Made by a program: the position numbers and the translations under genes. From positions 62,001-126,000 of the forward strand of contig NIVC01001632.1 of the NCBI GenBank assembly GCA_002269645.1: DNA of 64,000 bases, read 5' to 3'. Shown piece after piece: positions 15,794-62,369 of the stretch. This DNA comes from Macrostomum lignano (taxonomy: Eukaryota). The number at the start of each line of letters is the position of its first letter. The first letter of the stretch is position 1. The notes beneath the pieces are model-generated. The model was not told the origin of the DNA and ran no database searches. It saw only the letters and a list, made by a program, of their open reading frames with translations.

Positions 15794-15986
15794 GTAAGTG
15801 GCGGATGGCTTTGTGGCGATTACACATGCTCTGAAATCAGAGTAAAATTGGTAATTCAATCTAATCCTACTGCCCACAAAAGTAGCACACTATCACATCA
15901 TAGAAATCGACAATGACACTATGCAGTACACATTGTCACGTAAAAGTACGGAGTGACTCATTCCAACTATTCATATGAGCGTAGAC

Positions 15987-25040: not shown

Positions 25041-25233
25041 GTAAGTGGCGGATGGCTTTGTGGCGATTACACATGCTCTGAAATCAGAGTAAAATTGGTA
25101 ATTCAATCTAATCCTACTGCCCACAAAAGTAGCACACTATCACATCATAGAAATCGACAATGACACTATGCAGTACACATTGTCACGTAAAAGTACGGAG
25201 TGACTCATTCCAACTATTCATATGAGCGTAGAC

Positions 25234-26750
25234 CACAGCAATCGGAGTGACACTCTCCAAAATTAACCACACTCACAACACAGCAATCGGAGTGACACTC
25301 TCCAAATGCACCACACTCCGCGACACAGCAATCGGAGTGAACACTCTCCAAATGCACCACACTCACAACACAGCAATCGGAGTGAACACTCTCCAAATGC
25401 ACCACACTCGCGACACAGCAATCGGAGTGACACTCTCCAAATACACCACACTCACGACACAGCAATGGGAGTGACACTCTCCAAATGCACCACACTCGCG
25501 ACACAGCAATCGGAGTGAACACTCTCCAAATGCACCACACTCACGACACAGCAATCGGAGTGAACACTCTCCAAATTCACCACACTCGCGACACAGCAAT
25601 CGGAGTGACACTCTCCAAATACACCACACTCACGACACAGCAATCGGAGTGACACTCTCCAAATACACCACACTCACAACACAGCAATGGGAGTGACACT
25701 CTCCAAATGCACCACACTCGCGACACAGCAATCGGAGTGAACACTCTCCAAATGCACCACACTCACGACACAGCAATCGGAGTGAACACTCTCCAAATTC
25801 ACCACACTCGCGACACAGCAATCGGAGTGACACTCTCCAAATACACCACACTCACGACACAGCAATCGGAGTGACACTCTCCAAATACACCACACTCACG
25901 ACACAGCAATCGGAGTGAACACTCTCCAAATGCACCACACTCGCGACACAGCAATCGAGTGACACTCTCCAAATACACCACACTCACGACACAGCAATCG
26001 GAGTGACACTCTCCAAATGCACCACACTCGCGACACAGCAATCGGAGTGAACACTCTCCAAATGCACCACACTCACAACACAGCAATCGGAGTGAACACT
26101 CTCCAAATGCACCACACTCGCGACACAGCAATCGGAGTGACACTCTCCAAATACACCACACTCACAACACAGCAATGGGAGTGACACTCTCCAAATGCAC
26201 CACACTCGCGACACAGCAATCGGAGTGAACACTCTCCAAATGCACCACACTCACGACACAGCAATCGGTGAACACTCTCCAAATTCACCACACTCGCGAC
26301 ACAGCAATCGGAGTGACACTCTCCAAATTCACCACACTCGCGACACAGCAATCGGAGTGACACTCTCCAAATACACCACACTCACGACACAGCAATCGGA
26401 GTGACACTCTCCAAATACACCATCACAACACAGCAATGGGAGTGACACTCTCCAAATGCACACAGCAATCGGAGTGAACACTCTCCAAATGCACCACACT
26501 CACGACACAGCAATCGGAGTGAACACTCTCCAAATTCACCACACTCGCGACACAGCAATCGGAGTGACACTCTCCAAATACACCACACTCACGACACAGC
26601 AATCGGAGTGACACTCTCCAAATACACCACACTCACGACACAGCAATCGGAGTGAACACTCTCCAAATGCACCACACTCGCGACACAGCAATCGGAGTGA
26701 CACTCCTCCAAATACACCACACTCACGACACAGCAATCGGAGTGACACTC
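25234..26750. repeat. 44/45-bp satellite, block 2
   Basis: Same unit as 15987-17417. Confidence 0.95.
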
Positions 26751-28284: not shown

Positions 28285-31200
28285 TCACTTAACAACGCCG
28301 TACATGACCCAGTAAACTACATTGAATATTATAAAACTGAGTGGAAAAAGTCTGCGCGAAATTTTATCAATCTTTCGAGCCGTATTGTTGATCTGCTGCG
28401 ATGGGAACAGCTCGTTGCCAGGCGACAAACAGACTGACGGCTAAAAAACGGAGCGTTAATACGTTTGATTCGATTTGCATTGTATATTTTAAAGTGCATC
28501 CTACAAAGCTCTATTCGAACTCACGCTGCCTTCTTGGTCAGTCGGTCCACCAGACTCAATCAGCGTTGCCGATGTGGAAGTGAAGGAACGCCGCGGCACC
28601 GAGCCACTGCGCGTTCGAGTAGACGCCTTCTTTGGCCCGATGTCTCGCCGACTGTAAACATTGACCACGGCGAATTCCAGCAGCGATGCGAACACAAACA
28701 CCAGACAGACACTCATCCAGACGTCAATAGCTTTGATGTAGGACACCCGGGGCAGCGACTGCCCGGCTCCGGAGGATTGCGTTGTCATGGTGAGCACTTC
28801 GGTTTGAATCGGTTTCATGTGGGTGTTTAATTGATTTTTTTATAAATATATACTCAATAATACTGTTTAAAAAAAATCACTATAATTTTGTCCCTGACGT
28901 GTAGAATGAGCTTCAAATCATACACAGGTTCGGAGTGAGGTGGGTGCGGAGTGAGGTGGGTGCAGAGTGGGGTGAGTGCAGAGTGAGGTGGGTGCGGAGT
29001 GAGGTGGGTGCAGAGAGAGGTGGGTGCGGGGTTAAGTGACTGCGGCGTGGAGGTGGATGCGGAGTGAAGTGGGTGCGCGTGAAGTGGGTGCGGGGGAAGT
29101 GGGTGCAGAGAGAGATGGGTGCGGGGTTAAGTGACTGCGGCGTGGAGGTGGATGCGGAGTGAAGTGGGTGCGGGTGAAGTGGGTGCGGAGTTAAGTAGGC
29201 AGTGAGTTTGGTGGTAATTGAGGTGCTTCTAATTGCGAGTAGCTGTAGAGAATGATTAAGTATTACTGAGCCACTAGCAATGTAACCAGACCATACCTGT
29301 CAGAAGACCCAAACTGACTCTTGCCGGAATGGCTTCTGTGTTAATCCAGAAAGCCACCCAGCTGAGAATGACGATCAGAACCGTGGGAATGTACACCTGG
29401 CGGCAAGAGACGGTGACTCATTATTATTGAACGCATTATTACTAGAGCGCTATGTAAAATTTTTTACCTGAATGATAAAGTATCCAATATCTCTCTGCAG
29501 AATGAAATCCACCTGCAGACAGGGATAACTTCCCGTAGTATAGTTCTTTGAGCATTCTTTAGTCGGATAGCCTTTCAGAATAAACTGGGGCATGCTCAGA
29601 TCATCAGTGGCCTCGACCGATTTGTTTGGCAGCCACTTGAATACCACTGTGTGCATTGTGTGGCCGACTGGAGGATAAATATTGAAAGGTGACAGCGCGT
29701 TAGAAAGCCTTATGCAATAAAAAATGCAACTATACATGCAGTTCAGTGAATATCAGCTCACAACTCTCCAGCATCATTGGACATATTTGAGTGTCCAGCG
29801 GGTATTTCTGTAGCTGCATCATGCAGGATAGAGTAGCGGAGATCCTGTCCGGTGGAGGTTAGGAGAGAGTGAAAATTTAATTGAATTTGAATGCTAATTT
29901 GGACCGGCAGTTTATAAATTGGAGTCATTTATTCACTAGATAATTTAGCCATAAATAGAGGCCGACTAGGATACGCGGAAGTGAGGAGGGGGATCCGGAG
30001 TGAGGTGGGTGTGAGTGAAGTACATGTAGGTGTGGATGGGGTGGGTGTGAGTGAAATAGGTGCGGAATGAGGTGGGTGAGAGTGAGGTGGGTAAGAGTGA
30101 GGTGGGTGTAAGTGAGGTGGTTGAGAGTGAGTTGGGTGAGAGTGAGGTGGGTGTGAGTGAGGTGGGTGTGAGTGAGGTGGGTGTGAGTGAGGTGGGTGTG
30201 AGTGAGGTGGGTGTGGGTGAGGTGGGTGTGAGTGAGGTGGGTGTGAGTGAGGTGGGTGTGAGTGAGGTGGGTGTGAGTGAGGTGGGTGTGAGTGAGGTGG
30301 GTGTGAGTGAGGTGGGTGTGAGTGAGGTGGGTGTGAGTGAGGTGGGTGTGAGTGAGGTGGGTGTGAGTGAGGTGGGTGTGAGTGAGGTGGGTGTGAGTGA
30401 GGTGGGTGTGAGTGAGGTGGGTGTGAGTGAGGTGGGTGTGAGTGAGGTGGGTGTGAGTGAGGTGGGTGTGAGTGAGGTGGGTGTGAGTGAGGTGGGTGTG
30501 AGTGAGGTGGGTGTGAGTGAGGTGGGTGTGAGTGAGGTGGGTGTGAGTGAGGTGGGTGTGAGTGAGGTGGGTGTGAGTGAGGTGGGTGTGAGTGAGGTGG
30601 GTGTGAGTGAGGTGGGTTGGAGTGATTTTCACTATCTGGTGATTGGATGAGGTCATTAGCACTTGGATGAGTACAAACAGCTCCGATAGTGTACAATGGT
30701 GGACACCACATTGCTCAGTCGCCAACTTACTTCATGACGTACCACAGCTTCCCATCGGGATAAAGGTTGATGAAGCGATTCGGGATGGTGACGTGGTGAA
30801 AGTCAGCCTTTTTCTCGTTTCTGTAAATAAGTGTGCAAAAGCGCCTTCAACTTCAACTCAGTTTGGATTTCGGGGAAACTCTGAAGTTTCTAGAATACCG
30901 AAAGAAGACATCCGGGACCCAGAGTTTCTCCCAGATCTTGTCCTCCAGTTTGACGCAGTCCTTGGTGTCCAGACCTTCGCTTCTATTGAACCTGAGTCTC
31001 GGATCGTACCACTGCTGTCTGAGGTAGATGTTCACGGAGTAGTCCTGAAAAATTTTGTTCAGTAAGATGAGGTAGCGTTTTTGGGAGCTGGTTAGTTTAA
31101 TATAGCAAGACAACAAGTACATCACCATGGTTTGTTCGCTTATTGAATAAAAGCTGTTGATGTAAATCCCCAAGTGTACTGTTGTTGGCTTGTCTGCAGT

Positions 31201-31336
31201 GAATACAGAATGTCCAGTGTTTGCGTGGACAATCATTTATGCGTTTTCATGATTCAAAGATGGTTATTTTAACCTACCTCCGTGAGGACTATTTTGCCTT
31301 GTGTAATTTATTAGCAAACGATCGATGATGTTCTTC
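28285..31336 (-). CDS. Cys-loop ligand-gated chloride channel subunit, GluCl/glycine-receptor-like (lophotrochozoan GluCl type); 9 exons
   Basis: Exons 31336-31278, 31193-31126, 31044-30899, 30820-30731, 29844-29762, 29667-29468, 29396-29297, 28796-28525, 28440-28285; all GT-AG with compatible phases. Motifs: YLRQQW (loop D), [11 protein letters not shown] (loop A), Cys-loop [15 protein letters not shown], loop [14 protein letters not shown]1 [17 protein letters not shown], anion-selective PAR before M2, M3 [10 protein letters not shown]4 [21 protein letters not shown], then TGA. Confidence 0.93.
28929..29198. repeat. Intronic ~16-bp G-rich minisatellite (gagtgaggtgggtgcg), degenerate
   Basis: Direct reading; lies within channel intron 28797-29296. 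Confidence 0.9.
29996..30618. repeat. Intronic 15-bp minisatellite (gagtgaggtgggtgt)n, ~40 copies
   Basis: Direct reading; lies within channel intron 29845-30730. Confidence 0.97.
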
Positions 31337-33980: not shown

Positions 33981-36900
33981 TTGTGGAACTGTTGGGTGGA
34001 ATAAACATCGGAATAGAAGGGGTCAGGACCATAGACAAAGCTCCTTTGTGAAACTGTTGGGTGGAATAAACATCGGAATAGAAGGGGTCAGGACCATAGA
34101 CAAAGCTCCTTTGTGGAACTGTTGGGTGGAATAAACATCGGAATAGAAGGGGTCAGGACCATAGACAAAGCTCCTTTGTGAAACTGTTGGGTGGAATAAA
34201 CATCGGAATAGAAGGGGTCAGGACCATAGACAAAGCTCCTTTGTGGAACTGTTAGGTGGAATAAACATCGGAATAGAAGGGGCCAGGACCATAGACAAAG
34301 CTCCTTTGTGAAACTGTTGGGTGGAATAAACATCGGAATAGAAGGGGTCAGGACCATAGACAAAGCTCCTTTGTGGAACTGTTGGGTGGAATAAACATCG
34401 GAATAGAAGGGGTCAGGACCATAGACAAAGCTCCTTTGTGAAACTGTTGGGTGGAATAAACATCGGAATAGAAGGGGTCAGGACCATAGACAAAGCTCCT
34501 TTGTGGAACTGTTGGTGGAATAAACATCGGAATAGAAGGGGCCAGGACCATAGACAAAGCTCCTTTGTGGAACTGTTTGGTGGAATAAACATCGGAATAG
34601 AAGGGGTCAGGACCATAGACAAAGCTCCTTTGTGGAACTGTTTGGTGGAATAAACATCGGAATAGAAGGGGCCAGGACCATAGACAAAGCTCCTTTGTGG
34701 AACTGTTGGGTGGAATAAACATCGGAATAGAAGGGGTCAGGACCATAGACAAAGCTCCTTTGTGGAACTGTTGGGTGGAATAAACATCGGAATAGAAGGG
34801 GTCAGGACCATAGACAAAGCTCCTTTGTGGAACTGTTGGGTGGAATAAACATCGGAATAGAAGGGGTCAGGACCATAGACAAAGCTCCTTTGTGGAACTG
34901 TTTGGTGGAATAAACATCGGAATAGAAGGGGTCAGGACCATAGACAAAGCTCCTTTGTGGAACTGTTGGGTGGAATAAACATCGGAATAGAAGGGGTCAG
35001 GACCATAGACAAAGCTCCTTTGTGGAACTATTTGGTGGAATAAACATCGGAATAGAAGGGGTCAGGACCATAGACAAAGCTCCTTTGTGGAACTGTTGGG
35101 TGGAATAAACATCGGAATAGAAGGGGTCAGGACCATAGACAAAGCTCCTTTGTGGAACTGTTGGGTGGAATAAACATCGGAATAGAAGGGGTCAGGACCA
35201 TAGACAAAGCTCCTTTGTGGAACTGTTGGGTGGAATAAACATCGGAATAGAAGGGGTCAGGACCATAGACAAAGCTCCTTTGTGGAACTGTTGGGTGGAA
35301 TAAACATCGGAATAGAAGGGGTCAGGACCATAGACAAAGCTCCTTTGTGGAACTGTTGGGTGGAATAAACATCGGAATAGAAGGGGTCAGGACCATAGAC
35401 AAAGCTCCTTTGTGAACTGTTGGGTGGAATAAACATCGGAATAGAAGGGGTCAGGACCATAGACAAAGCTCCTTTGTGGAACTGTTGGGTGGAATAAACA
35501 TCGGAATAGAAGGGGTCAGGACCATAGACAAAGCTCCTTTGTGGAACTGTTTGGTGGAATAAACATCGGAATAGAAGGGGTCAGGACCATAGACAAAGCT
35601 CCTTTGTGGAACTGTTGGGTGGAATAAACATCGGAATAGAAGGGGTCAGGACCATAGACAAAGCTCCTTTGTGGAACTGTTGGGTGGAATAAACATCGGA
35701 ATAGAAGGGGTCAGGACCATAGACAAAGCTCCTTTGTGGAACTGTTGGGTGGAATAAACATCGGAATAGAAGGGGTCAGGACCATAGACAAAGCTCCTTT
35801 GTGGAACTGTTTGGTGGAATAAACATCGGAATAGAAGGGGTCAGGACCATAGACAAAGCTCCTTTGTGGAACTGTTGGGTGGAATAAACATCGGAATAGA
35901 AGGGGTCAGGACCATAGACAAAGCTCCTTTGTGGAACTGTTTGGTGGAATAAACATCGGAATAGAAGGGGTCAGGACCATAGACAAAGCTCCTTTGTGGA
36001 ACTGTTGGGTGGAATAAACATCGGAATAGAAGGGGTCAGGACCATAGACAAAGCTCCTTTGTGGAACTGTTGGGTGGAATAAACATCGGAATAGAAGGGG
36101 TCAGGACCATAGACAAAGCTCCTTTGTGGAACTGTTGGGTGGAATAAACATCGGAATAGAAGGGGTCAGGACCATAGACAAAGCTCCTTTGTGGAACTGT
36201 TGGGTGGAATAAACATCGGAATAGAAGGGGTCAGGACCATAGACAAAGCTCCTTTGTGGAACTGTTGGTGGAATAAACATCGGAATAGAAGGGGTCAGGA
36301 CCATAGACAAAGCTCCTTTGTGGAACTGTTGGGTGGAATAAACATCGGAATAGAAGGGGTCAGGACCATAGACAAAGCTCCTTTGTGGAACTGTTGGGTG
36401 GAATAAACATCGGAATAGAAGGGGTCAGGACCATAGACAAAGCTCCTTTGTGGAACTGTTGGGTGGAATAAACATCGGAATAGAAGGGGTCAGGACCATA
36501 GACAAAGCTCCTTTGTGGAACTGTTGGGTGGAATAAACATCGGAATAGAAGGGGTCAGGACCATAGACAAAGCTCCTTTGTGGAACTGTTGGGTGGAATA
36601 AACATCGAATAGAAGGGGTCAGGACCATAGACAAAGCTCCTTTGTGGAACTGTTGGGTGGAATAAACATCGGAATAGAAGGGGTCAGGACCATAGACAAA
36701 GCTCCTTTGTGGAACTGTTGGTGGAATAAACATCGGAATAGAAGGGGTCAGGACCATAGACAAAGCTCCTTTGTGGAACTGTTGGGTGGAATAAACATCG
36801 GAATAGAAGGGGTCAGGACCATAGACAAAGCTCCTTTGTGGAACTGTTGGGTGGAATAAACATCGGAATAGAAGGGGTCAGGACCATAGACAAAGCTCCT

Positions 36901-39900
36901 TTGTGGAACTGTTGGGTGGAATAAACATCGGAATAGAAGGGGTCAGGACCATAGACAAAGCTCCTTTGTGGAACTGTTGGTGGAATAAACATCGGAATAG
37001 AAGGGGTCAGGACCATAGACAAAGCTCCTTTGTGGAACTGTTGGGTGGAATAAACATCGGAATAGAAGGGGTCAGGACCATAGACAAAGCTCCTTTGTGG
37101 AACTGTTGGGTGGAATAAACATCGGAATAGAAGGGGTCAGGACCATAGACAAAGCTCCTTTGTGGAACTGTTGGTGGAATAAACATCGGAATAGAAGGGG
37201 TCAGGACCATAGACAAAGCTCCTTTGTGGAACTGTTGGGTGGAATAAACATCGGAATAGAAGGGGTCAGGACCATAGACAAAGCTCCTTTGTGGAACTGT
37301 TGGGTGGAATAAACATCGGAATAGAAGGGGTCAGGACCATAGACAAAGCTCCTTTGTGGAACTGTTGGGTGGAATAAACATCGGAATAGAAGGGGTCAGG
37401 ACCATAGACAAAGCTCCTTTGTGGAACTGTTGGGTGGAATAAACATCGGAATAGAAGGGGTCAGGACCATAGACAAAGCTCCTTTGTGGAACTGTTGGGT
37501 GGAATAAACATCGGAATAGAAGGGGTCAGGACCATAGACAAAGCTCCTTTGTGGAACTGTTGGGTGGAATAAACATCGGAATAGAAGGGGTCAGGACCAT
37601 AGACAAAGCTCCTTTGTGGAACTGTTGGGTGGAATAAACATCGGAATAGAAGGGGTCAGGACCATAGACAAAGCTCCTTTGTGGAACTGTTGGGTGGAAT
37701 AAACATCGGAATAGAAGGGGTCAGGACCATAGACAAAGCTCCTTTGTGGAACTGTTGGGTGGAATAAACATCGGAATAGAAGGGGTCAGGACCATAGACA
37801 AAGCTCCTTTGTGGAACTGTTGGGTGGAATAAACATCGGAATAGAAGGGGTCAGGACCATAGACAAAGCTCCTTTGTGGAACTGTTGGGTGGAATAAACA
37901 TCGGAATAGAAGGGGTCAGGACCATAGACAAAGCTCCTTTGTGGAACTGTTGGGTGGAATAAACATCGGAATAGAAGGGGTCAGGACCATAGACAAAGCT
38001 CCTTTGTGGAACTGTTGGGTGGAATAAACATCGGAATAGAAGGGGTCAGGACCATAGACAAAGCTCCTTTGTGGAACTGTTGGGTGGAATAAACATCGGA
38101 ATAGAAGGGGTCAGGACCATAGACAAAGCTCCTTTGTGGAACTGTTGGGTGGAATAAACATCGGAATAGAAGGGGTCAGGACCATAGACAAAGCTCCTTT
38201 GTGGAACTGTTGGGTGGAATAAACATCGGAATAGAAGGGGTCAGGACCATAGACAAAGCTCCTTTGTGGAACTGTTGGGTGGAATAAACATCGGAATAGA
38301 AGGGGTCAGGACCATAGACAAAGCTCCTTTGTGGAACTGTTGGGTGGAATAAACATCGGAATAGAAGGGGTCAGGACCATAGACAAAGCTCCTTTGTGGA
38401 ACTGTTGGTGGAATAAACATCGGAATAGAAGGGGTCAGGACCATAGACAAAGCTCCTTTGTGGAACTGTTGGGTGGAATAAACATCGGAATAGAAGGGGT
38501 CAGGACCATAGACAAAGCTCCTTTGTGGAACTGTTGGGTGGAATAAACATCGGAATAGAAGGGGTCAGGACCATAGACAAAGCTCCTTTGTGGAACTGTT
38601 GGGTGGAATAAACATCGGAATAGAAGGGGTCAGGACCATAGACAAAGCTCCTTTGTGGAACTGTTGGGTGGAATAAACATCGGAATAGAAGGGGTCAGGA
38701 CCATAGACAAAGCTCCTTTGTGGAACTGTTGGGTGGAATAAACATCGGAATAGAAGGGGTCAGGACCATAGACAAAGCTCCTTTGTGGAACTGTTGGGTG
38801 GAATAAACATCGGAATAGAAGGGGTCAGGACCATAGACAAAGCTCCTTTGTGGAACTGTTGGGTGGAATAAACATCGGAATAGAAGGGGTCAGGACCATA
38901 GACAAAGCTCCTTTGTGGAACTGTTGGGTGGAATAAACATCGGAATAGAAGGGGTCAGGACCATAGACAAAGCTCCTTTGTGGAACTGTTGGGTGGAATA
39001 AACATCGGAATAGAAGGGGTCAGGACCATAGACAAAGCTCCTTTGTGGAACTGTTGGGTGGAATAAACATCGGAATAGAAGGGGTCAGGACCATAGACAA
39101 AGCTCCTTTGTGGAACTGTTGGGTGGAATAAACATCGGAATAGAAGGGGTCAGGACCATAGACAAAGCTCCTTTGTGGAACTGTTGGGTGGAATAAACAT
39201 CGGAATAGAAGGGGTCAGGACCATAGACAAAGCTCCTTTGTGGAACTGTTGGGTGGAATAAACATCGGAATAGAAGGGGTCAGGACCATAGACAAAGCTC
39301 CTTTGTGGAACTGTTGGGTGGAATAAACATCGGAATAGAAGGGGTCAGGACCATAGACAAAGCTCCTTTGTGGAACTGTTGGGTGGAATAAACATCGGAA
39401 TAGAAGGGGTCAGGACCATAGACAAAGCTCCTTTGTGGAACTGTTGGGTGGAATAAACATCGGAATAGAAGGGGTCAGGACCATAGACAAAGCTCCTTTG
39501 TGGAACTGTTGGGTGGAATAAACATCGGAATAGAAGGGGTCAGGACCATAGACAAAGCTCCTTTGTGGAACTGTTGGGTGGAATAAACATCGGAATAGAA
39601 GGGGTCAGGACCATAGACAAAGCTCCTTTGTGGAACTGTTGGGTGGAATAAACATCGGAATAGAAGGGGTCAGGACCATAGACAAAGCTCCTTTGTGGAA
39701 CTGTTGGGTGGAATAAACATCGGAATAGAAGGGGTCAGGACCATAGACAAAGCTCCTTTGTGGAACTGTTGGGTGGAATAAACATCGGAATAGAAGGGGT
39801 CAGGACCATAGACAAAGCTCCTTTGTGGAACTGTTGGGTGGAATAAACATCGGAATAGAAGGGGTCAGGACCATAGACAAAGCTCCTTTGTGGAACTGTT

Positions 39901-42900
39901 GGGTGGAATAAACATCGGAATAGAAGGGGTCAGGACCATAGACAAAGCTCCTTTGTGGAACTGTTGGGTGGAATAAACATCGGAATAGAAGGGGTCAGGA
40001 CCATAGACAAAGCTCCTTTGTGGAACTGTTGGGTGGAATAAACATCGGAATAGAAGGGGTCAGGACCATAGACAAAGCTCCTTTGTGGAACTGTTGGGTG
40101 GAATAAACATCGGAATAGAAGGGGTCAGGACCATAGACAAAGCTCCTTTGTGGAACTGTTGGGTGGAATAAACATCGGAATAGAAGGGGTCAGGACCATA
40201 GACAAAGCTCCTTTGTGGAACTGTTGGGTGGAATAAACATCGGAATAGAAGGGGTCAGGACCATAGACAAAGCTCCTTTGTGGAACTGTTGGGTGGAATA
40301 AACATCGGAATAGAAGGGGTCAGGACCATAGACAAAGCTCCTTTGTGGAACTGTTGGGTGGAATAAACATCGGAATAGAAGGGGTCAGGACCATAGACAA
40401 AGCTCCTTTGTGGAACTGTTGGGTGGAATAAACATCGGAATAGAAGGGGTCAGGACCATAGACAAAGCTCCTTTGTGGAACTGTTGGGTGGAATAAACAT
40501 CGGAATAGAAGGGGTCAGGACCATAGACAAAGCTCCTTTGTGGAACTGTTGGGTGGAATAAACATCGGAATAGAAGGGGTCAGGACCATAGACAAAGCTC
40601 CTTTGTGGAACTGTTGGGTGGAATAAACATCGGAATAGAAGGGGTCAGGACCATAGACAAAGCTCCTTTGTGGAACTGTTGGGTGGAATAAACATCGGAA
40701 TAGAAGGGGTCAGGACCATAGACAAAGCTCCTTTGTGGAACTGTTGGGTGGAATAAACATCGGAATAGAAGGGGTCAGGACCATAGACAAAGCTCCTTTG
40801 TGGAACTGTTGGGTGGAATAAACATCGGAATAGAAGGGGTCAGGACCATAGACAAAGCTCCTTTGTGGAACTGTTGGGTGGAATAAACATCGGAATAGAA
40901 GGGGTCAGGACCATAGACAAAGCTCCTTTGTGGAACTGTTGGGTGGAATAAACATCGGAATAGAAGGGGTCAGGACCATAGACAAAGCTCCTTTGTGGAA
41001 CTGTTGGGTGGAATAAACATCGGAATAGAAGGGGTCAGGACCATAGACAAAGCTCCTTTGTGGAACTGTTGGGTGGAATAAACATCGGAATAGAAGGGGT
41101 CAGGACCATAGACAAAGCTCCTTTGTGGAACTGTTGGGTGGAATAAACATCGGAATAGAAGGGGTCAGGACCATAGACAAAGCTCCTTTGTGGAACTGTT
41201 GGGTGGAATAAACATCGGAATAGAAGGGGTCAGGACCATAGACAAAGCTCCTTTGTGGAACTGTTGGGTGGAATAAACATCGGAATAGAAGGGGTCAGGA
41301 CCATAGACAAAGCTCCTTTGTGGAACTGTTGGGTGGAATAAACATCGGAATAGAAGGGGTCAGGACCATAGACAAAGCTCCTTTGTGGAACTGTTGGGTG
41401 GAATAAACATCGGAATAGAAGGGGTCAGGACCATAGACAAAGCTCCTTTGTGGAACTGTTGGGTGGAATAAACATCGGAATAGAAGGGGTCAGGACCATA
41501 GACAAAGCTCCTTTGTGGAACTGTTGGGTGGAATAAACATCGGAATAGAAGGGGTCAGGACCATAGACAAAGCTCCTTTGTGGAACTGTTGGGTGGAATA
41601 AACATCGGAATAGAAGGGGTCAGGACCATAGACAAAGCTCCTTTGTGGAACTGTTGGGTGGAATAAACATCGGAATAGAAGGGGTCAGGACCATAGACAA
41701 AGCTCCTTTGTGGAACTGTTGGGTGGAATAAACATCGGAATAGAAGGGGTCAGGACCATAGACAAAGCTCCTTTGTGGAACTGTTGGGTGGAATAAACAT
41801 CGGAATAGAAGGGGTCAGGACCATAGACAAAGCTCCTTTGTGGAACTGTTGGGTGGAATAAACATCGGAATAGAAGGGGTCAGGACCATAGACAAAGCTC
41901 CTTTGTGGAACTGTTGGGTGGAATAAACATCGGAATAGAAGGGGTCAGGACCATAGACAAAGCTCCTTTGTGGAACTGTTGGGTGGAATAAACATCGGAA
42001 TAGAAGGGGTCAGGACCATAGACAAAGCTCCTTTGTGGAACTGTTGGGTGGAATAAACATCGGAATAGAAGGGGTCAGGACCATAGACAAAGCTCCTTTG
42101 TGGAACTGTTGGGTGGAATAAACATCGGAATAGAAGGGGTCAGGACCATAGACAAAGCTCCTTTGTGGAACTGTTGGGTGGAATAAACATCGGAATAGAA
42201 GGGGTCAGGACCATAGACAAAGCTCCTTTGTGGAACTGTTGGGTGGAATAAACATCGGAATAGAAGGGGTCAGGACCATAGACAAAGCTCCTTTGTGGAA
42301 CTGTTGGGTGGAATAAACATCGGAATAGAAGGGGTCAGGACCATAGACAAAGCTCCTTTGTGGAACTGTTGGGTGGAATAAACATCGGAATAGAAGGGGT
42401 CAGGACCATAGACAAAGCTCCTTTGTGGAACTGTTGGGTGGAATAAACATCGGAATAGAAGGGGTCAGGACCATAGACAAAGCTCCTTTGTGGAACTGTT
42501 GGGTGGAATAAACATCGGAATAGAAGGGGTCAGGACCATAGACAAAGCTCCTTTGTGGAACTGTTGGGTGGAATAAACATCGGAATAGAAGGGGTCAGGA
42601 CCATAGACAAAGCTCCTTTGTGGAACTGTTGGGTGGAATAAACATCGGAATAGAAGGGGTCAGGACCATAGACAAAGCTCCTTTGTGGAACTGTTGGGTG
42701 GAATAAACATCGGAATAGAAGGGGTCAGGACCATAGACAAAGCTCCTTTGTGGAACTGTTGGGTGGAATAAACATCGGAATAGAAGGGGTCAGGACCATA
42801 GACAAAGCTCCTTTGTGGAACTGTTGGGTGGAATAAACATCGGAATAGAAGGGGTCAGGACCATAGACAAAGCTCCTTTGTGGAACTGTTGGGTGGAATA

Positions 42901-45884
42901 AACATCGGAATAGAAGGGGTCAGGACCATAGACAAAGCTCCTTTGTGGAACTGTTGGGTGGAATAAACATCGGAATAGAAGGGGTCAGGACCATAGACAA
43001 AGCTCCTTTGTGGAACTGTTGGGTGGAATAAACATCGGAATAGAAGGGGTCAGGACCATAGACAAAGCTCCTTTGTGGAACTGTTGGGTGGAATAAACAT
43101 CGGAATAGAAGGGGTCAGGACCATAGACAAAGCTCCTTTGTGGAACTGTTGGGTGGAATAAACATCGGAATAGAAGGGGTCAGGACCATAGACAAAGCTC
43201 CTTTGTGGAACTGTTGGGTGGAATAAACATCGGAATAGAAGGGGTCAGGACCATAGACAAAGCTCCTTTGTGGAACTGTTGGGTGGAATAAACATCGGAA
43301 TAGAAGGGGTCAGGACCATAGACAAAGCTCCTTTGTGGAACTGTTGGGTGGAATAAACATCGGAATAGAAGGGGTCAGGACCATAGACAAAGCTCCTTTG
43401 TGGAACTGTTGGTGGAATAAACATCGGAATAGAAGGGGTCAGGACCATAGACAAAGCTCCTTTGTGGAACTGTTGGGTGGAATAAACATCGGAATAGAAG
43501 GGGTCAGGACCATAGACAAAGCTCCTTTGTGGAACTGTTGGGTGGAATAAACATCGGAATAGAAGGGGTCAGGACCATAGACAAAGCTCCTTTGTGGAAC
43601 TGTTGGGTGGAATAAACATCGGAATAGAAGGGGTCAGGACCATAGACAAAGCTCCTTTGTGGAACTGTTGGGTGGAATAAACATCGGAATAGAAGGGGTC
43701 AGGACCATAGACAAAGCTCCTTTGTGGAACTGTTGGGTGGAATAAACATCGGAATAGAAGGGGTCAGGACCATAGACAAAGCTCCTTTGTGGAACTGTTG
43801 GGTGGAATAAACATCGGAATAGAAGGGGTCAGGACCATAGACAAAGCTCCTTTGTGGAACTGTTGGGTGGAATAAACATCGGAATAGAAGGGGTCAGGAC
43901 CATAGACAAAGCTCCTTTGTGGAACTGTTGGGTGGAATAAACATCGGAATAGAAGGGGTCAGGACCATAGACAAAGCTCCTTTGTGGAACTGTTGGGTGG
44001 AATAAACATCGGAATAGAAGGGGTCAGGACCATAGACAAAGCTCCTTTGTGGAACTGTTGGGTGGAATAAACATCGGAATAGAAGGGGTCAGGACCATAG
44101 ACAAAGCTCCTTTGTGGAACTGTTGGGTGGAATAAACATCGGAATAGAAGGGGTCAGGACCATAGACAAAGCTCCTTTGTGGAACTGTTGGGTGGAATAA
44201 ACATCGGAATAGAAGGGGTCAGGACCATAGACAAAGCTCCTTTGTGGAACTGTTGGGTGGAATAAACATCGGAATAGAAGGGGTCAGGACCATAGACAAA
44301 GCTCCTTTGTGGAACTGTTGGGTGGAATAAACATCGGAATAGAAGGGGTCAGGACCATAGACAAAGCTCCTTTGTGGAACTGTTGGTGGAATAAACATCG
44401 GAATAGAAGGGGTCAGGACCATAGACAAAGCTCCTTTGTGGAACTGTTGGGTGGAATAAACATCGGAATAGAAGGGGTCAGGACCATAGACAAAGCTCCT
44501 TTGTGGAACTGTTGGGTGGAATAAACATCGGAATAGAAGGGGTCAGGACCATAGACAAAGCTCCTTTGTGGAACTGTTGGTGGAATAAACATCGGAATAG
44601 AAGGGGTCAGGACCATAGACAAAGCTCCTTTGTGGAACTGTTGGGTGGAATAAACATCGGAATAGAAGGGGTCAGGACCATAGACAAAGCTCCTTTGTGG
44701 AACTGTTGGGTGGAATAAACATCGGAATAGAAGGGGTCAGGACCATAGACAAAGCTCCTTTGTGGAACTGTTGGGTGGAATAAACATCGGAATAGAAGGG
44801 GTCAGGACCATAGACAAAGCTCCTTTGTGGAACTGTTGGGTGGAATAAACATCGGAATAGAAGGGGTCAGGACCATAGACAAAGCTCCTTTGTGGAACTG
44901 TTGGGTGGAATAAACATCGGAATAGAAGGGGTCAGGACCATAGACAAAGCTCCTTTGTGGAACTGTTGGGTGGAATAAACATCGGAATAGAAGGGGTCAG
45001 GACCATAGACAAAGCTCCTTTGTGGAACTGTTGGGTGGAATAAACATCGGAATAGAAGGGGTCAGGACCATAGACAAAGCTCCTTTGTGGAACTGTTGGG
45101 TGGAATAAACATCGGAATAGAAGGGGTCAGGACCATAGACAAAGCTCCTTTGTGGAACTGTTGGTGGAATAAACATCGGAATAGAAGGGGTCAGGACCAT
45201 AGACAAAGCTCCTTTGTGGAACTGTTGGGTGGAATAAACATCGGAATAGAAGGGGTCAGGACCATAGACAAAGCTCCTTTGTGGAACTGTTGGGTGGAAT
45301 AAACATCGGAATAGAAGGGGTCAGGACCATAGACAAAGCTCCTTTGTGGAACTGTTGGGTGGAATAAACATCGGAATAGAAGGGGTCAGGACCATAGACA
45401 AAGCTCCTTTGTGGAACTGTTGGGTGGAATAAACATCGGAATAGAAGGGGTCAGGACCATAGACAAAGCTCCTTTGTGGAACTGTTGGGTGGAATAAACA
45501 TCGGAATAGAAGGGGTCAGGACCATAGACAAAGCTCCTTTGTGGAACTGTTGGGTGGAATAAACATCGGAATAGAAGGGGTCAGGACCATAGACAAAGCT
45601 CCTTTGTGGAACTGTTGGTGGAATAAACATCGGAATAGAAGGGGTCAGGACCATAGACAAAGCTCCTTTGTGGAACTGTTGGGTGGAATAAACATCGGAA
45701 TAGAAGGGGTCAGGACCATAGACAAAGCTCCTTTGTGGAACTGTTGGGTGGAATAAACATCGGAATAGAAGGGGTCAGGACCATAGACAAAGCTCCTTTG
45801 TGGAACTATTTGGTGGAATAAACATCGGAATAGAAGGGGTCAGGACCATAGACAAAGCTCCTTTGTGGAACTGTTGGGTGGAAT
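33981..45884. repeat. 65-bp satellite array, ~183 copies (~11.9 kb)
   Basis: Unit gtggaactgttgggtggaataaacatcggaatagaaggggtcaggaccatagacaaagctccttt; essentially invariant centre, with variant units at the left and right edges. Confidence 0.99.
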
Positions 45885-52611: not shown

Positions 52612-53039
52612 AGCTGATGAGAGATCGCTGCTAGCCCCGCTCGCAGACTCTCAGCTTTCAATTCGTTTCTCTTCGCCAAAGTTCAGCAGCAACGGGTTTC
52701 TCAGTCATTTTCATTTTAGTATCCTTGTCAGGCCTCAAACTAATAGAGACACATTACCCTTGATTTGGTGAGGAGCTGCTTGCTCAACCGTGTTAAATAT
52801 TGTAAAAAAACCATGAACCATGCTATTAGGTTCATGCCATTAGACCATTAGGCAATTCAGGGATATTTTCATTTCATTGTGTTGCTTTCGTAGTTGCTTT
52901 AGAGTGGTTTTAAATTCCATGGTTATTATAAATTGTTCGGAGAAGACAGCCGAATGACCAACCAAAAAAATCCTCCCAGAACCTTGAGAACGGGCCAGTC
53001 AACTATAATCAACAATAGACCAGAGAAAAAGACAACCAT

Positions 53040-57824: not shown

Positions 57825-58847
57825 ATGCCAACTTTGACCCCTCAACAAACATCCATCCGCCCTCTGAGCAGCCGGTCGCGTCTCCCGAGTCTCGCCGGCG
57901 CCGTCTCGTGTCTCAGCCGGCAGCCCAGCCGGCTCTGGTCCACCGGCCCGCCGGACCGACCGCCCTGCGTCATCGGCGAGGGCGCATTCGGCCGCGTACT
58001 TCGCGGCACTTTCAAAGGCCAGCCAGCGGCCATTAAAGAGGTCGGCGAACGGCCGAATGCGCGTCGACGCTGGCGCGGACCCGGCGACAGTCCAGATCAT
58101 GACTATCGGCGGGAGATTCGCGGCGCCGAGTTCCTACTGAAGCTCAGCCACGAAAACGTGGTCCGCTACCTGCACTTTGACAGCAGCAGCGAGCCCGGCC
58201 TGCTGTACGTTGTCATGGAGCTGATCGACGGCCGGAATCTCGCTGAGTTGAGACGGAAAGGGCCCTTCAGCGAAGACGATTTGCGATCGCTCATGACTCA
58301 GGTGAGTAAAAATCGTTCTCACTCGGCTTGGATGTTTTGGAGTTTAGACCCCAATCAGCAACCAAGCTTTATCTTTCAACCCTGTTAGACCTGCTGCGGC
58401 TTGCACTACCTGCACAGCCGGCAGCCGTCAATCATTCACCGCGACGTCAAGGGCTCCAACATCATGCTGTCGAGCCGGGACAACGTGGCCAAAATCGTTG
58501 ACCTCGGCCTGGCGGTCCAGGGCGCGCCAGCTGTCAGCCACTCGCTGGCTGGCACGCATCGCTTCATGGCGCCAGAGGTCTACGAGACCCGGGCTTACTC
58601 CACCAAGTCTGACGTGTTCGCTCTGGGCTGCGCCCTCTTCGAGTTGCAGTGCGGCCAGCCACCTCACTCGGACAAGTCCAACGGGATGGCCGTCTGTTAC
58701 GCGGTGATGTACAGCCCGATGCCTCGGCTGCCTGATGGTTGTAATCGCCGACTGGTGGACTTTTACGATCGGTGCACCAGAAAAGACCCGATTGAGCGGC
58801 CAACTGCTAAAGAGCTGCTGGGACACACCTTTCTGGTTGGAGCTTGA
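57825..58847 (+). CDS. Ser/Thr protein kinase (compact, 2 exons; MAP3K/TKL-like mix of motifs)
   Basis: Exons 57825-58301 and 58389-58847 (phase 0, GTGAGT..TAG). Motifs GEGAFG, AIK, E(alphaC), HENVVRY, HRDVKGSN, DLG, GTHRFMAPE, SDVFALG, ERPTAKELLGH. Confidence 0.92.
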
Positions 58848-59365: not shown

Positions 59366-59850
59366 GAGAAGGTTAACCAAAACTGCACAAAGTACCTACT
59401 GCTGACACCTGTGATGTCACTGATTTGCTCAATTTCGCATGCATCAACAAATTTAACCACAGATTTTTTAATTGGAACTAATTGAAACTTTTTGGCCCGT
59501 TCTTTACATCCAGCTTTGAAAGGCAATAAAAGCAAGCCAAGACAATCTGCATTTTCCACTGCAGGCTTTTCAATTTTTTTGTAAAAATGTAAATATATTC
59601 CTAAATGAAGATTGTTAAACAGATTTTCTATATAGAGACCGTTTGATTTTTTCTTCTAATTCAACTTTTGAACAACTAGCAATCATTTGAAGCTCTAACT
59701 ATTCCCAGAAATTTCCATACCTGTGCGTAATACTCTACTACTACTATTGACCAATAAGTAGGCAGAACTGTTGTTTATTTTGTACTTTGCCCGAAAAGAA
59801 CCGCATTCGAAAAAACACAGTCCGGGAAAACTCATCCCTCAAAAGTTCTC

Positions 59851-60085
59851 TCAAGAATTGCGCGCCGCCTTGACAGCCTTGGCAATTTTGCCAACAACCT
59901 TGGCAGTTCTGATCACCATACCGAAGAGGCCTCTCTCCCCTGTCAGGGCGGACGCGTCCACGTCGGACATGGCCCGCATAGCGGCCAAGTTCTCAGCCTC
60001 CTCCTGGTTTGAGTCGCTATTGGTTGGGAGCGGCCGCGGCCAGGGCTGCGCAGAGCAGAAATCCGAGAGCGAGCTGCCACTTCAT
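59851..60085 (-). CDS. Putative antimicrobial/cytolytic peptide precursor (signal + acidic propiece + cationic amphipathic helix), with one +1 frameshift in a C3 run
   Basis: Removing one base from the GGG at 60026-60028 gives MKWQLALGFLLCAALAAAAPTNSDSNQEEAENLAAMRAMSDVDASALTGER-GLFGMVIRTAKVVGKIAKAVKAARNS* (77 aa). AATAAA lies ~70 nt after the stop (+ strand tttatt 59774-59779). Confidence 0.7.
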
Positions 60086-60591
60086 GATTGAGTCTGTTGG
60101 GCTGCCTGCTGATGAAGCTGAGAGTCTGCGATTGAGCTGGCTGAATTGTCTGCATTTATGCTCAAAATTCGGCACGTTTTTCCTGAGCTTGGAATGCTCT
60201 GTTTGACCTCGACACTTTCACGTGTTAAGGACTTGACATTTATTGCACTTTACAGCAATTTAATGGCCAAGCAGTGTCAATCTTAGCTAGGTAAACTTTG
60301 CTCAAAATCTACTCAATAGACTGTTTGATGAAGCTGCCACTGTCTCACTATTTGCCCTATCTAAAGTTAGTTCCAGCCCAAGCGTTGTTGTATGCACTAC
60401 TTTATTAACGAATACGTTTGAGGCAGAAGTTAAACAAATAATTTTTTCTACAATAGGATTGTAACATTAACAACTAAATTAGAAGGACGTTATTCATTGG
60501 ACACATACACGAAATTCATTGGAAAATTTATCATTGCAATAGGATGTTGTCACCTTTTATGGGCACTGTAGCGCCGAGTGCAAAAAATTCA

Positions 60592-61107
60592 GGGGGGTTT
60601 CACTAGGCCGAAATTTCACTTCGCCGAAAGCATCTTCCTTCACTAGGCCGAAACTAACATGATAACATTAAAGTGAATCTTAGAGCCATGCATATTCTAC
60701 AAATCGGAATCCAGGCAAATCTGCATGCTTTCAAAGGAGCCATAAAAACATACAAGCACTCTATAACTTAAAAGTCCATCCGACTGAGACAGAAAATGCA
60801 ATGAAAATAATAAGCAATCAGAGTTCACCCCCAAATGAAGTCAGAAATGTCGAAAATATTCAATACAAAAAAACTGAGTGACCATATCGTGCTGCCACTT
60901 TGGTAGCAGAGTAACACTGAGGTCAAAATAAAGAAACTGGTGCAGAGAAATCGTCACTGCGCTTGCGGTTCCATTTTGGAGGCTTAAGTTCACACCCCCT
61001 TTCGACCATAGTCAGGACGCTGCTAAAATGATTTTTCGGCAAATGTGAACTTTCGGCCTAGTGAAAGAGAGTGCTTTTCGGCAAAGTGAAACTAATGAAA
61101 GCGCCCC
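60592..61107. mobile_element. MITE (516 bp) with GG-starting TIRs and 8-bp TSD; Merlin- or Mutator-like
   Basis: TSD AAAATTCA at 60584-60591 and 61108-61115; ~60-bp imperfect TIRs built from ttcactaggccgaaa / ttcact(t/c)gccgaaa sub-repeats. Confidence 0.7.
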
Positions 61108-61492
61108 AAAATTCAAACCAAATGTCTGAACTTCTGAATTAAACTTCGCCAGCCCCCAAGGCCAAGTGTACATCCCTGACGATTAGAAAGTCTCAGCGCT
61201 GGTTGTGGAACCGATGTCGCCCGCACTCCTCTTGTAATTACGAGCGTATGATGACGTCATGATTATGTCGACAGTTTAAAAAGACTTTGACTTCCACGAG
61301 AAAACTACTATAATCGCATAATATTACTATATAGTAGCTATTAGCTGATATTGCCGCACGAAATAAACTCTGAAATGAAATCAACTTGTTATATTATTTA
61401 TTTACGCTCTTGTATTTTAGCCAATGAGCTCGTGGTTCGAAAGTATTGTGACACATTCAGGTTTTAGCGAACTGTCAGACTTCCGAGGGTCT

Positions 61493-61621
61493 TCAGTTGG
61501 CGATGGCGTGGGCGACTTTTTTGATGTTCCTGATGACGCGTACCACCTTCCTGATGCGGATGCCCTTCTTGGCCAGAGTCTGTTGCTGGGCGAGCTGATG
61601 AACCTGAGAGTCTGCGATTGA
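61493..61621 (-). CDS. Second cationic amphipathic peptide locus (KK-GIRIRKVVRVIRNIKKVAHAIAN*); paralog of 59851-60085, 5' structure unresolved
   Basis: Mature-like peptide at 61564-61493. The 46-nt segment 61576-61621 matches 60090-60135 at 39/46. AATAAA ~90 nt after the stop (61397-61402). No adjacent signal/propiece; possibly a deletion derivative or differently spliced. Confidence 0.55.
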   Translation of the reverse strand, partial: SIADSQVHQLAQQQTLAKKGIRIRKVVRVIRNIKKVAHAIAN

Positions 61622-62369
61622 CTTTCTTGGACTTTGGCAACGAACTTGTTTGTACTTTTGTGTTGGGCAAAGAGTGATTGATACTTTCTCACACAATTCA
61701 TTGTTTACCTCACCTTCATTGTGATTGCCCTGCCTCAGTTTTTGTGTTACCTGACGGTTCTGCGTAAAAGCAATCAGAGCAAACGTAAGTTTATGTCTCT
61801 GGAAGTCAATGGATAAAGTCACTATAAGATTGAGTACAATCATGTTATTACGTTTATATCTCAAAGCAGTTTTTCGACGGTGTGACTTCTAAGACTACCT
61901 ACCAATTTCTTTGTAGCAACAATAATTTGTATCTTGATTGATATTCAACCCATGTCTAACCAGAAATGATCCAAGAAGTTCATCTATACGACCCAACATG
62001 ACCATGCACCTTTTTGCTTTTCATCTCGTAGGTATACGAGCTACTTTTTTACGTGAAGCTTTGCTAGCAACTCAGGTGCTTGCATAGATTTGTGCACAGT
62101 TTGCGTCAAAATTCAGAAATTTAACGGAAGGAAGCTTTTCCGTCTCGTAAATTTTATTAGAAAAGGCACAGATTGCAGTTTCACAGCACATTCCACTGCA
62201 TTATGCAGGCTTCTGAGCCGCCCACAGCCACGAGACGAGTGCCTTCTGATAGGAATTTCAAGCTGGAAATTTTGCACGGACCGTGGAACACTCGAAATTG
62301 AGCCTGCGGAAAGCGAAAACGTTTGTAGCGATGACACGCATGCTTGCATCAATCCTTGCAGCTATGATC

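What the first reader, a model, noticed from the sequence alone, without database searches (positions are those of the whole stretch)
61397..61864. Second, divergent cationic helix locus forming a tandem AMP-like cluster
Seen: 1.4 kb upstream on the same strand is KK-GIRIRKVVRVIRNIKKVAHAIAN* (7 R/K, hydrophobics in i/i+3/i+4 register), with its own AATAAA. Directly before it is a 46-nt segment 39/46 identical to the 5' leader of locus 1. In locus 1 this leader precedes the ATG; here it runs straight into LAKK. Inference: the loci are paralogs with conserved leader but rapidly diverged mature peptides, the pattern typical of AMP families. Locus 2 either lost signal+pro by a microhomology deletion or takes its N-terminus from an upstream exon (ATG 61843, donor after NRQ, acceptor ctctcag in phase 0).
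Basis: partly seen in the sequence, partly recalled or inferred. Interest (0 to 1): 0.7.

Follow-up and report, generated by a model that had tools for sequence, protein, structure and literature searches.

The report
Truncated cationic-peptide gene copy, flatworm
In the flatworm Macrostomum lignano, two small unannotated loci 1.5 kb apart share a 46-base leader and each ends in a positively charged helix peptide like an antimicrobial peptide, but the one examined here has no start codon or secretion signal and its neighbour is frame-broken, so this is an interesting but unproven and possibly decaying gene pair.

Summary
On the minus strand, 61576-61493 encodes LAKK-GIRIRKVVRVIRNIKKVAHAIAN-stop. 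AATAAA lies at 61402-61397. The 46 nt before the peptide (61621-61576) match the locus 1 leader (60135-60090) at 39/46, far beyond chance.

The window is Macrostomum lignano assembly Mlig_3_7, contig NIVC01001632.1. Neither locus is annotated there, and no protein, Pfam or PDB relative was found.

The peptide stretch looks coding (GC3 0.89; local exons 0.67-0.75) and is the most amphipathic cationic ORF end in the window. Identity outside the leader is at random level, and the two mature peptides are alike only in composition (P about 0.07-0.09). The "paralogue" reading therefore rests on the leader plus matching architecture.

Locus 2 has no ATG, signal or propiece. The proposed upstream exon (ATG 61843) is compositionally non-coding (GC3 0.42). 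Locus 1 is split by a +1 frame offset. The first 17 nt of the leader also occur at 52641-52657(+), with no peptide ORF after them.

Best reading: a 5'-truncated, probably recently disabled copy of a lineage-restricted secreted cationic-helix peptide gene. Transcription could not be tested. An alternative N-terminus (mini-exon at ATG 61719, or the spliced-leader AUG, both in frame) is not excluded.

The parts
61576..61621 (-). Locus 2 leader: 46 nt, 39/46 identical to the locus 1 leader; the first 28 nt are 27/28
   Evidence: the 18-mer is exact in both loci and was matched by 0/100 shuffles
61604..61610 (-). ctctcag acceptor-like site inside the leader. The junction falls on a codon boundary of the peptide frame. 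It is a near match (5/6) to the M. lignano trans-splice acceptor motif [T/C]TNCAG
   Evidence: motif taken from PMC8629364; use of the site was not tested
61493..61576 (-). Locus 2 peptide ORF: LAKK, then GIRIRKVVRVIRNIKKVAHAIAN, then the stop (61495-61493). GC1/2/3 = 0.48/0.33/0.89; all 5 Ile codons are ATC and all 4 Ala codons are GCC
   Evidence: AlphaFold predicts a helix at residues 88-122 of the ORF, block-mean pLDDT 50-81 (70-81 over residues 101-120)
61397..61402 (-). Locus 2 AATAAA poly(A) signal, 91 nt after the stop
61622..61864 (-). GC 0.39 and GC3 0.38, so it looks non-coding
   Evidence: low-confidence AlphaFold model; no homologues
61709..61719 (-). Candidate two-codon mini-exon ATG AAG followed by the consensus donor GTGAG. 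Splicing to the acceptor at 61604 (110-nt intron) is in frame and gives a 38-aa product with no signal peptide
   Evidence: inference only
61853..61858 (-). TATAAA. The first ATG downstream of it, after a nominal 30-nt spacing, is ATG 61719
   Evidence: inference only
60090..60135 (-). Locus 1 leader (5'UTR). A TATA-like CATAAATG at 60159-60154 lies 19-24 nt upstream of its first base
60017..60085 (-). Locus 1 signal-peptide piece (ATG 60085, 22 codons), ending at an in-frame TAG at 60019-60017
   Evidence: GC3 0.73
59851..60027 (-). Locus 1 acidic propiece (net -5, ending GER) plus the cationic helix GLFGMVIRTAKVVGKIAKAVKAARNS and the stop, in a frame offset by +1 from the signal piece
   Evidence: AlphaFold helix with pLDDT 88-95 over the mature part
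59774..59779 (-). Locus 1 AATAAA, about 72 nt after the stop
52641..52657 (+). Third, partial copy (17/17) of the start of the leader, TCGCAGACTCTCAGCTT, 30 nt after the stop of an annotated 438-aa gene. No cationic ORF follows it

Best explanation
Locus 2 is a partial, 5'-truncated copy of a small gene family restricted to Macrostomum. The family's fuller form is locus 1: a 5' leader, a signal peptide, an acidic propiece, a basic cleavage site and a 23-26-residue lysine/arginine-rich amphipathic helix. This is the architecture of linear alpha-helical host-defence peptides.

Locus 2 keeps the leader, a dibasic KK site, the helix, the stop and a poly(A) signal. It has lost the roughly 150 nt that hold the start codon, signal and most of the propiece. 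As assembled it cannot make a secreted peptide, so it is most likely a recently disabled copy. Its codon bias and its perfect amphipathic register are still intact.

What is shown: the anatomy, the shared leader, the coding-like composition and the helix propensity.

What is inferred: common descent of the peptide parts; secretion; cleavage after ER (locus 1) or KK (locus 2); neutralisation of the helix by the acidic propiece; and membrane-active, antimicrobial-type function.
For: - Organism: M. lignano Mlig_3_7, contig NIVC01001632.1.
- Leader: 39/46 identical, E = 5e-8.
- Composition: locus 2 peptide codons have GC3 0.89, local exons 0.67-0.75, and the flanking open frame 0.38.
- Peptide class: loci 1 and 2 are the only two K/R plus V/I/A amphipathic ORF ends among 1727 in the window, and locus 2 ranks first. 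The 23-mer's hydrophobic moment exceeds shuffles at P = 0.04. AlphaFold predicts helices for both.
- Locus 1 pieces: a 22-codon signal-like piece (MK, then a 17-residue hydrophobic core, then AAA-P), a propiece with net charge -5, and a helix with net charge +6.
- Locus 2 has no ATG between the leader and the peptide, and only 4 codons separate them.
- Identity is uneven: 39/46 in the leader against 28/72 in the peptide codons, P = 6e-7. This argues against a simple recent neutral copy of locus 1 and for a family with a constrained leader.
Against: - No transcript, read-level or cross-species evidence could be reached. The loci are not annotated.
- No homologue was found among 1.84 billion representative proteins or in the 5.8-billion-cluster index, nor in Pfam or PDB.
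- The peptide parts are not significantly similar beyond composition (P = 0.07-0.09), so the only demonstrable homology is 46 nt.
- The first 17 nt of the leader recur elsewhere in an unrelated context.
- Locus 1 is itself frame-broken, so no intact family member has been seen.
- The very strong codon bias of locus 2, together with a coherent set of signals (TATAAA, first ATG, GTGAG donor, in-phase acceptor), fits a still-functional gene about as well as a fresh pseudogene.
Confidence: 0.45

Rival explanations
1. Locus 2 is a working gene whose N-terminus comes from elsewhere. There are two routes. In the first, a two-codon mini-exon (ATG AAG at 61719-61714, donor GTGAG) is spliced over a 110-nt intron to the conserved acceptor at 61604. 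In the second, the M. lignano spliced leader, which ends in AUG, is trans-spliced there. Either route gives a 37-38-residue product, M(K)VHQLAQQQTLAKK plus the helix, with no signal peptide. That would be a leaderless cationic micropeptide.
For: - Both routes are in frame.
- The donor matches the species consensus GT[G/A]AG. The acceptor is close to [T/C]TNCAG, and the SL ends in ATG (PMC8629364).
- TATAAA lies at 61858-61853, and ATG 61719 is the first ATG after the nominal start site.
- SL-AUG initiation in flatworms is documented in the literature retrieved (for example PMC9851317).
- The peptide codons have GC3 0.89, and a canonical AATAAA follows.
- Locus 2 lies about 540 nt downstream of the poly(A) signal of an EML-like gene on the same strand. 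That is within the published operon distance of under 1 kb.
Against: - There are no expression data.
- The chance of an in-phase junction is about 1 in 3, and a GT[AG]AG pentamer is expected about once per 500 nt.
- A leaderless product has no route to secretion, which does not fit an antimicrobial role.
- In locus 1 the same acceptor would give only a 12-codon upstream ORF.
Confidence: 0.25
2. One reading: an upstream exon (ATG 61843 to NRQ, donor GT at 61750) supplies a signal peptide and is spliced to the acceptor at 61604.
For: - The frame is open from 61864 and both junctions are in phase 0.
- The N-terminus MIVLNLIVTLSI is hydrophobic.
- P(no stop) = 0.004 in dinucleotide shuffles.
Against: - GC 0.38 and GC3 0.42 are intergenic-like.
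- The donor GTAAC lacks the consensus G at +5.
- There is no charged n-region.
- ATG 61843 lies between TATAAA 61858 and its nominal start site.
- Open frames of 80 or more codons occur 18 times in 15 kb here.
- No homologues were found, and the AlphaFold model is low-confidence.
- Locus 1 has no counterpart upstream.
Confidence: 0.05
3. The two loci are not paralogues. The shared segment would be a short dispersed motif or repeat fragment (a core-promoter or splice-site motif), and the cationic ORFs would be unrelated or fortuitous.
For: - A 17/17 third copy sits at 52641-52657(+) with no peptide ORF after it.
- Similarity is at random level everywhere outside the 46 nt.
- The peptides are not significantly alike.
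- There are no relatives in any database.
Against: - Only 2 of 1727 ORF ends in the window are of this peptide type. Both lie on the same strand 1.5 kb apart, and each follows the leader closely (the locus 1 ATG 4 nt after it, the locus 2 peptide ORF running straight on) and precedes an AATAAA.
- Both have coding-like GC3.
- The third copy covers only 17 of the 46 nt.
Confidence: 0.15

Closest known systems
Linear cationic alpha-helical host-defence peptide precursors with a conserved prepro/leader region and a hypervariable mature peptide (amphibian dermaseptin-type genes; spider latarcin-type precursors cleaved after an ..E.R motif). This comparison is recalled from general knowledge and was not tested.
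   Same: Locus 1 has a signal piece, an acidic propiece ending in GER, and a +6 amphipathic helix of 26 residues. The leader is conserved while the mature peptides have diverged. The copies sit in tandem.
   Different: There is no sequence similarity to any such family (Pfam, PDB and phmmer all negative). What is conserved here is a 5'UTR-type leader, not the signal/pro coding region. Locus 2 has no signal or propiece, and locus 1 is frame-broken.
mesco-1/-2/-3, antimicrobial peptide precursors mined from the cestode Mesocestoides corti (PMC11546468)
   Same: They come from a flatworm. They are small secreted precursors carrying a strongly cationic C-terminal peptide, occur in several paralogous copies, and were found by genome mining.
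   Different: The mesco peptides are Arg/Gly-rich, 39-41 residues long, and have a C-terminal disulphide loop. The peptides here are Cys-free K/R/V/I/A helices of 23-26 residues, with no detectable homology.
Helminth defence molecules (FhHDM-1, Sm16/SPO-1; trematode-specific; PMC7373315)
   Same: They are small flatworm proteins whose C-terminus is a cationic amphipathic helix.
   Different: HDMs are described as trematode-specific. No similarity was detected. Locus 2 has no demonstrated signal peptide.
ORFs initiated by the 3'-terminal AUG of the flatworm spliced leader (slORFs; PMC9851317 and the work it cites)
   Same: The M. lignano SL ends in ATG. If it were trans-spliced at 61604 it would be in frame with the locus 2 peptide.
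   Different: Trans-splicing at this site is untested, and the acceptor matches the published motif at only 5 of 6 positions.

Membership tests
Secreted linear cationic alpha-helical antimicrobial peptide precursor (a class, not a homology family) | N-terminal signal peptide in frame with the peptide | tested here: not met
   Locus 2 has no ATG or hydrophobic signal between the leader and the peptide, and the proposed upstream exon is compositionally non-coding. Locus 1 has a signal-like piece, but it is out of frame with the rest.
Secreted linear cationic alpha-helical antimicrobial peptide precursor (a class, not a homology family) | Cationic, amphipathic, helix-prone mature peptide of about 12-50 residues | tested here: met
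   Locus 2 has charge +7, a best 18-mer moment of 0.82-0.94, and P = 0.04 against shuffles. AlphaFold predicts helices for both.
Secreted linear cationic alpha-helical antimicrobial peptide precursor (a class, not a homology family) | Anionic propiece and a basic processing site before the mature peptide | tested here: inconclusive
   Locus 1 has a propiece of net charge -5 ending in GER. Locus 2 has only KK before the helix and no propiece.
Secreted linear cationic alpha-helical antimicrobial peptide precursor (a class, not a homology family) | Expression, and antimicrobial or membrane activity of the peptide | not testable with these tools
   No M. lignano RNA data were reachable. The loci are not annotated, and no paper or supplement mentions them.
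Pfam antimicrobial-peptide families (cecropin, latarcin, dermaseptin, pleurocidin, uperin and others) | Profile match at or above the gathering score | tested here: not met
   The best match is the uperin family at E = 3.6 and 8.4 bits, against a cut-off of 21.4. Nothing was found.
Helminth defence molecules / mesco peptides (flatworm) | Detectable sequence homology | tested here: not met
   phmmer against 1.84e9 representative proteins gave 0 hits. The k-mer searches gave 0. The mesco sequences differ in composition and contain Cys.
SL trans-spliced gene of M. lignano | SL-bearing reads ending at an acceptor with the [T/C]TNCAG motif | not testable with these tools
   The acceptor-like TCTCAG matches the motif at 5 of 6 positions. 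No read data are available.

The most novel reading that the evidence does not exclude
Macrostomum lignano carries a previously undescribed, lineage-restricted family of linear cationic alpha-helical host-defence peptides, marked by a conserved 46-nt leader that contains a splice or trans-splice acceptor. Locus 2 would be an expressed member that gets its start codon from the spliced leader's terminal AUG or from a two-codon mini-exon. That would make it a leaderless variant of an antimicrobial-type peptide.
Probability: 0.12. Interest if true: 0.55.

Novelty: new member of a known kind. Interest (0 to 1): 0.3.

Why it matters
I found no report of antimicrobial peptides from M. lignano or other macrostomid flatworms, and flatworm examples in general are few. 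M. lignano is a transgenic model, so a real family could be studied in vivo by RNAi, reporters and bacterial challenge.

The very short precursors fall below usual ORF-calling thresholds, which would explain why they are missing from the annotation and from protein databases. The case therefore illustrates what standard pipelines miss.

As it stands, though, one copy is truncated and the other is frame-broken. The practical value is a lead for a genome-wide search with the leader as bait, not a demonstrated gene.

Tried and rejected
Searches for relatives and annotation, all empty:
- Peptide strings in the literature.
- Gene identifiers in the text and supplements of the M. lignano genome and transcriptome papers.
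- k-mer homologue searches with the locus 1 pro+mature piece and with the locus 2 123-aa ORF.
- Exhaustive phmmer with the locus 1 pro+mature piece.
- Exact look-up of the locus 2 ORF.
- PDB.
- Pfam.
- Rfam on the whole window.

Other checks:
- The metagenome scan with the 22-nt leader core gave one hit (L002). It shows no similarity beyond the core, so I read it as chance.
- tblastn and blastn of all pieces against the window plus 4.8 kb of extra contig found no further family member.

Readings rejected:
- A small intron that would heal the locus 1 frame offset: there is no GT...AG of suitable length between the signal and the propiece (sequence).
- The upstream exon at ATG 61843: rejected on composition and donor quality.
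- Homology of the leader to the spliced leader: only a 9-mer, AGACTCAAT, is shared, and only with locus 1 (P about 0.009).

Method note: one early Pfam scan used a joined reading of the two locus 1 frames. It returned nothing and nothing rests on it. All later searches used the pieces separately.

Full report
**Where this is**

The window is animal DNA, rich in satellites. A two-exon protein kinase at 57825-58847(+) is 100% identical to [quoted passage not shown]. That protein lies on contig NIVC01001632.1 of assembly GCA_002269645.1 (Mlig_3_7). The fetched locus L001 is identical to the window at 17091 of 17091 overlapping bases. In the 22 kb around the kinase the record annotates only the kinase and a 438-aa gene. 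Nothing is annotated at either peptide locus.

Both peptide loci lie on the minus strand. They sit between the 3' end of the kinase (+) and the terminal exon of an unannotated EML-like beta-propeller gene. That exon spans 62181-62303(-), with AATAAA at 62158-62153.

**Checking the observation**

- The minus-strand frame reads ...SIADSQVHQLAQQQTLAKKGIRIRKVVRVIRNIKKVAHAIAN, with the stop at 61495-61493.
- AATAAA lies at 61402-61397.
- The segment 61621-61576 matches 60135-60090 at 39/46 without gaps. The first 28 nt match at 27/28.
- The match has E = 5e-8 within the window, and no shuffle reproduces the exact 18-mer.
- In locus 1 the leader ends 4 nt before ATG 60085. In locus 2 it runs directly into LAKK.

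The peptide is strongly amphipathic. Its best 18-mer hydrophobic moment is 0.82-0.94, and the 23-mer beats shuffles at P = 0.04. I scanned all 1727 stop-terminated 23-mers in six frames. Eight pass charge >= +6 and moment >= 0.5. The other six are Arg/Lys-dominated or acid-, Ser- or Cys-containing 23-mers. Only loci 1 and 2 are K/R plus V/I/A helices, and locus 2 ranks first. AlphaFold, run without an alignment, predicts a helix over both peptides. Block-mean pLDDT is 50-81 across the locus 2 helix (70-81 over residues 101-120) and 88-95 for locus 1.

Locus 1 is not intact in this assembly. The signal-like piece (ATG 60085, 22 codons) runs into TAG at 60019-60017. The acidic propiece and the helix (60027-59854) are in the frame offset by +1. 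No GT...AG intron of suitable length could heal this. The assembly is PacBio/Canu polished with Pilon (PMC5730564). The offset could therefore be a residual error, an allele or a real lesion. I could not tell which.

**Coding signal**

Exons in this window have GC3 of 0.67-0.75 (kinase, CNOT1, the 438-aa gene).

| Segment | GC3 |
|---|---|
| Locus 1 signal piece | 0.73 |
| Locus 1 propiece | 0.78 |
| Locus 1 helix | 0.62 |
| Locus 2 peptide stretch | 0.89 |
| Open frame upstream of the locus 2 leader (61622-61843) | 0.38 |

- The locus 2 peptide stretch has GC1/2/3 of 0.48/0.33/0.89. Every Ile codon is ATC and every Ala codon is GCC.
- The open frame upstream of the locus 2 leader has an overall GC of 0.39.
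- That frame being open has P = 0.004 in shuffles. However, stop-free runs of 80 or more codons occur 18 times in 15 kb of non-satellite sequence here, so its openness carries little weight.

I therefore reject the ATG 61843 exon as the likely N-terminus.

**How far the homology goes**

Outside the 46 nt there is none that I can show. Local alignments upstream and downstream of the leader score no better than shuffles (P = 0.65 and 0.78).

| Segment compared | Identity |
|---|---|
| Leader | 39/46 |
| Peptide codons, anchored on the stop | 28/72 |
| 3'UTR | 26/90 |
| 46 nt upstream of the leader | 11/46 |

The two mature peptides align no better than composition-matched shuffles (P = 0.07-0.09). 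So the paralogue claim rests on a sharp 46-nt island plus the same architecture in the same order and orientation.

The contrast between leader and peptide codons (Fisher P = 6e-7) means locus 2 is not a recent neutral copy of locus 1. Either the leader is constrained while the peptides diverge quickly, or the leader was acquired separately.

A caution applies. The first 17 nt of the leader (TCGCAGACTCTCAGCTT) recur exactly at 52641-52657(+), 30 nt after the stop of the 438-aa gene. No cationic ORF follows, and there is no further similarity. It leaves room for the leader's core being a short recurrent motif.

**Possible N-termini for locus 2**

M. lignano trans-splices about 30% of its genes. 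The 35-nt spliced leader ends in ATG, the acceptor motif is [T/C]TNCAG, and operon neighbours lie under 1 kb apart (PMC8629364).

The conserved ctctcag at 61610-61604 is acceptor-like, and the junction falls on a codon boundary of the peptide frame. An SL added there would put its AUG in frame, giving M-VHQLAQQQTLAKK-helix. In locus 1 the same event would give a 12-codon upstream ORF whose TGA overlaps the main ATG. Use of the SL's terminal AUG as an initiator in flatworms is documented (papers retrieved).

A cis alternative also exists. TATAAA lies at 61858-61853. The first ATG after its nominal start site is 61719. It reads ATG AAG followed by the consensus donor GTGAG. A 110-nt intron to 61604 is in frame and gives a 38-aa product.

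Both models are coherent but untested, and neither supplies a signal peptide.

**Relatives elsewhere**

None were found:
- k-mer searches with the locus 1 pro+mature piece and with the locus 2 ORF;
- exhaustive phmmer against 1.84 billion representative proteins;
- Pfam;
- PDB;
- Rfam;
- literature strings;
- gene identifiers in M. lignano papers and supplements.

The window plus 4.8 kb of extra contig holds no third member. A metagenome scan with the leader core gave one hit with no similarity beyond the core, which I read as chance. Absence from protein databases is weak evidence, because precursors under 80 residues are usually not called.

**Interpretation**

The best-supported reading is that locus 2 is a 5'-truncated copy of a Macrostomum-restricted small gene for a secreted cationic helix peptide, and that locus 1 shows the fuller architecture. 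Locus 2 retains the leader, a dibasic site, the helix, the stop and the poly(A) signal. It lacks the start, the signal and the propiece, so it is most likely a recently disabled copy (confidence 0.45).

The rivals are:
- a functional leaderless product made through the mini-exon or the SL AUG (0.25);
- unrelated loci that share a dispersed motif (0.15).

The mechanism for the family is inferred from architecture alone. It would run: secretion; masking of the helix by the acidic propiece; cleavage after ER or KK; insertion of the amphipathic helix into anionic membranes.

**Comparison with known systems**

The locus works like a linear alpha-helical antimicrobial peptide precursor. It is not a detectable member of any described family. 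The flatworm mesco peptides (PMC11546468) and the trematode HDMs (PMC7373315) are analogues, not homologues.

**Verdict**

Interest is modest until expression and family size are known.

**Method note**

One early Pfam scan used a joined reading of the two locus 1 frames. It returned nothing and nothing rests on it. All later searches used the pieces separately.

Noticed in passing
window 60017-60085 and 59851-60027 (-): Locus 1, the supposedly complete neighbour, is frame-broken in this assembly. The signal-peptide piece ends at an in-frame TAG, and the propiece plus helix are in the +1 frame.
   Followed up: partly
window 60598-61091: A MITE-like element of about 500 bp lies between the two loci. 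It has inverted ends (22-27 nt, 85-95% complementary) that carry TTCACTAGGCCGAAA sub-repeats.
   Followed up: no
window 52641-52657 (+): An exact 17-nt copy of the start of the leader lies 30 nt after the stop of the annotated 438-aa gene. No peptide ORF follows it. This may be a recurrent short motif in this genome.
   Followed up: partly
window 62181-62303 (-); L001 19111-19440 (-) and 20460-21533 (-): An unannotated EML-like / WD-repeat gene lies on the minus strand. Its terminal exon matches the end of Pfam Beta-prop_EML_2 (E = 1e-5), with AATAAA at 62158-62153. Its last intron holds a 2.6-kb, 41-bp satellite (window 62372-65013).
   Followed up: partly
window 8853-17417 and 18079-26750: A tandem segmental duplication of about 9.2 kb has near-identical ORFs and identical internal 24-bp and 44-bp arrays.
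   Followed up: no
window 33981-45884: A 65-bp satellite with 183 copies at 99% identity gives a constant GC skew over 12 kb.
   Followed up: no
window 60089-60097 (-): The 9-mer AGACTCAAT just before the locus 1 ATG is also found in the M. lignano spliced leader (P about 0.009). It is not shared by locus 2 and is probably chance.
   Followed up: partly
window 883-1653 (-), 30853-31236 (-): These are a CNOT1 N-terminal-domain exon and a Cys-loop receptor ligand-binding-domain exon. They identified the window as animal DNA.
   Followed up: no
L002 348-370: A JGI metagenome contig (Ga0058698_10159518) carries the 22-nt leader core exactly but shows no similarity beyond it. I read it as a chance match.
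   Followed up: yes
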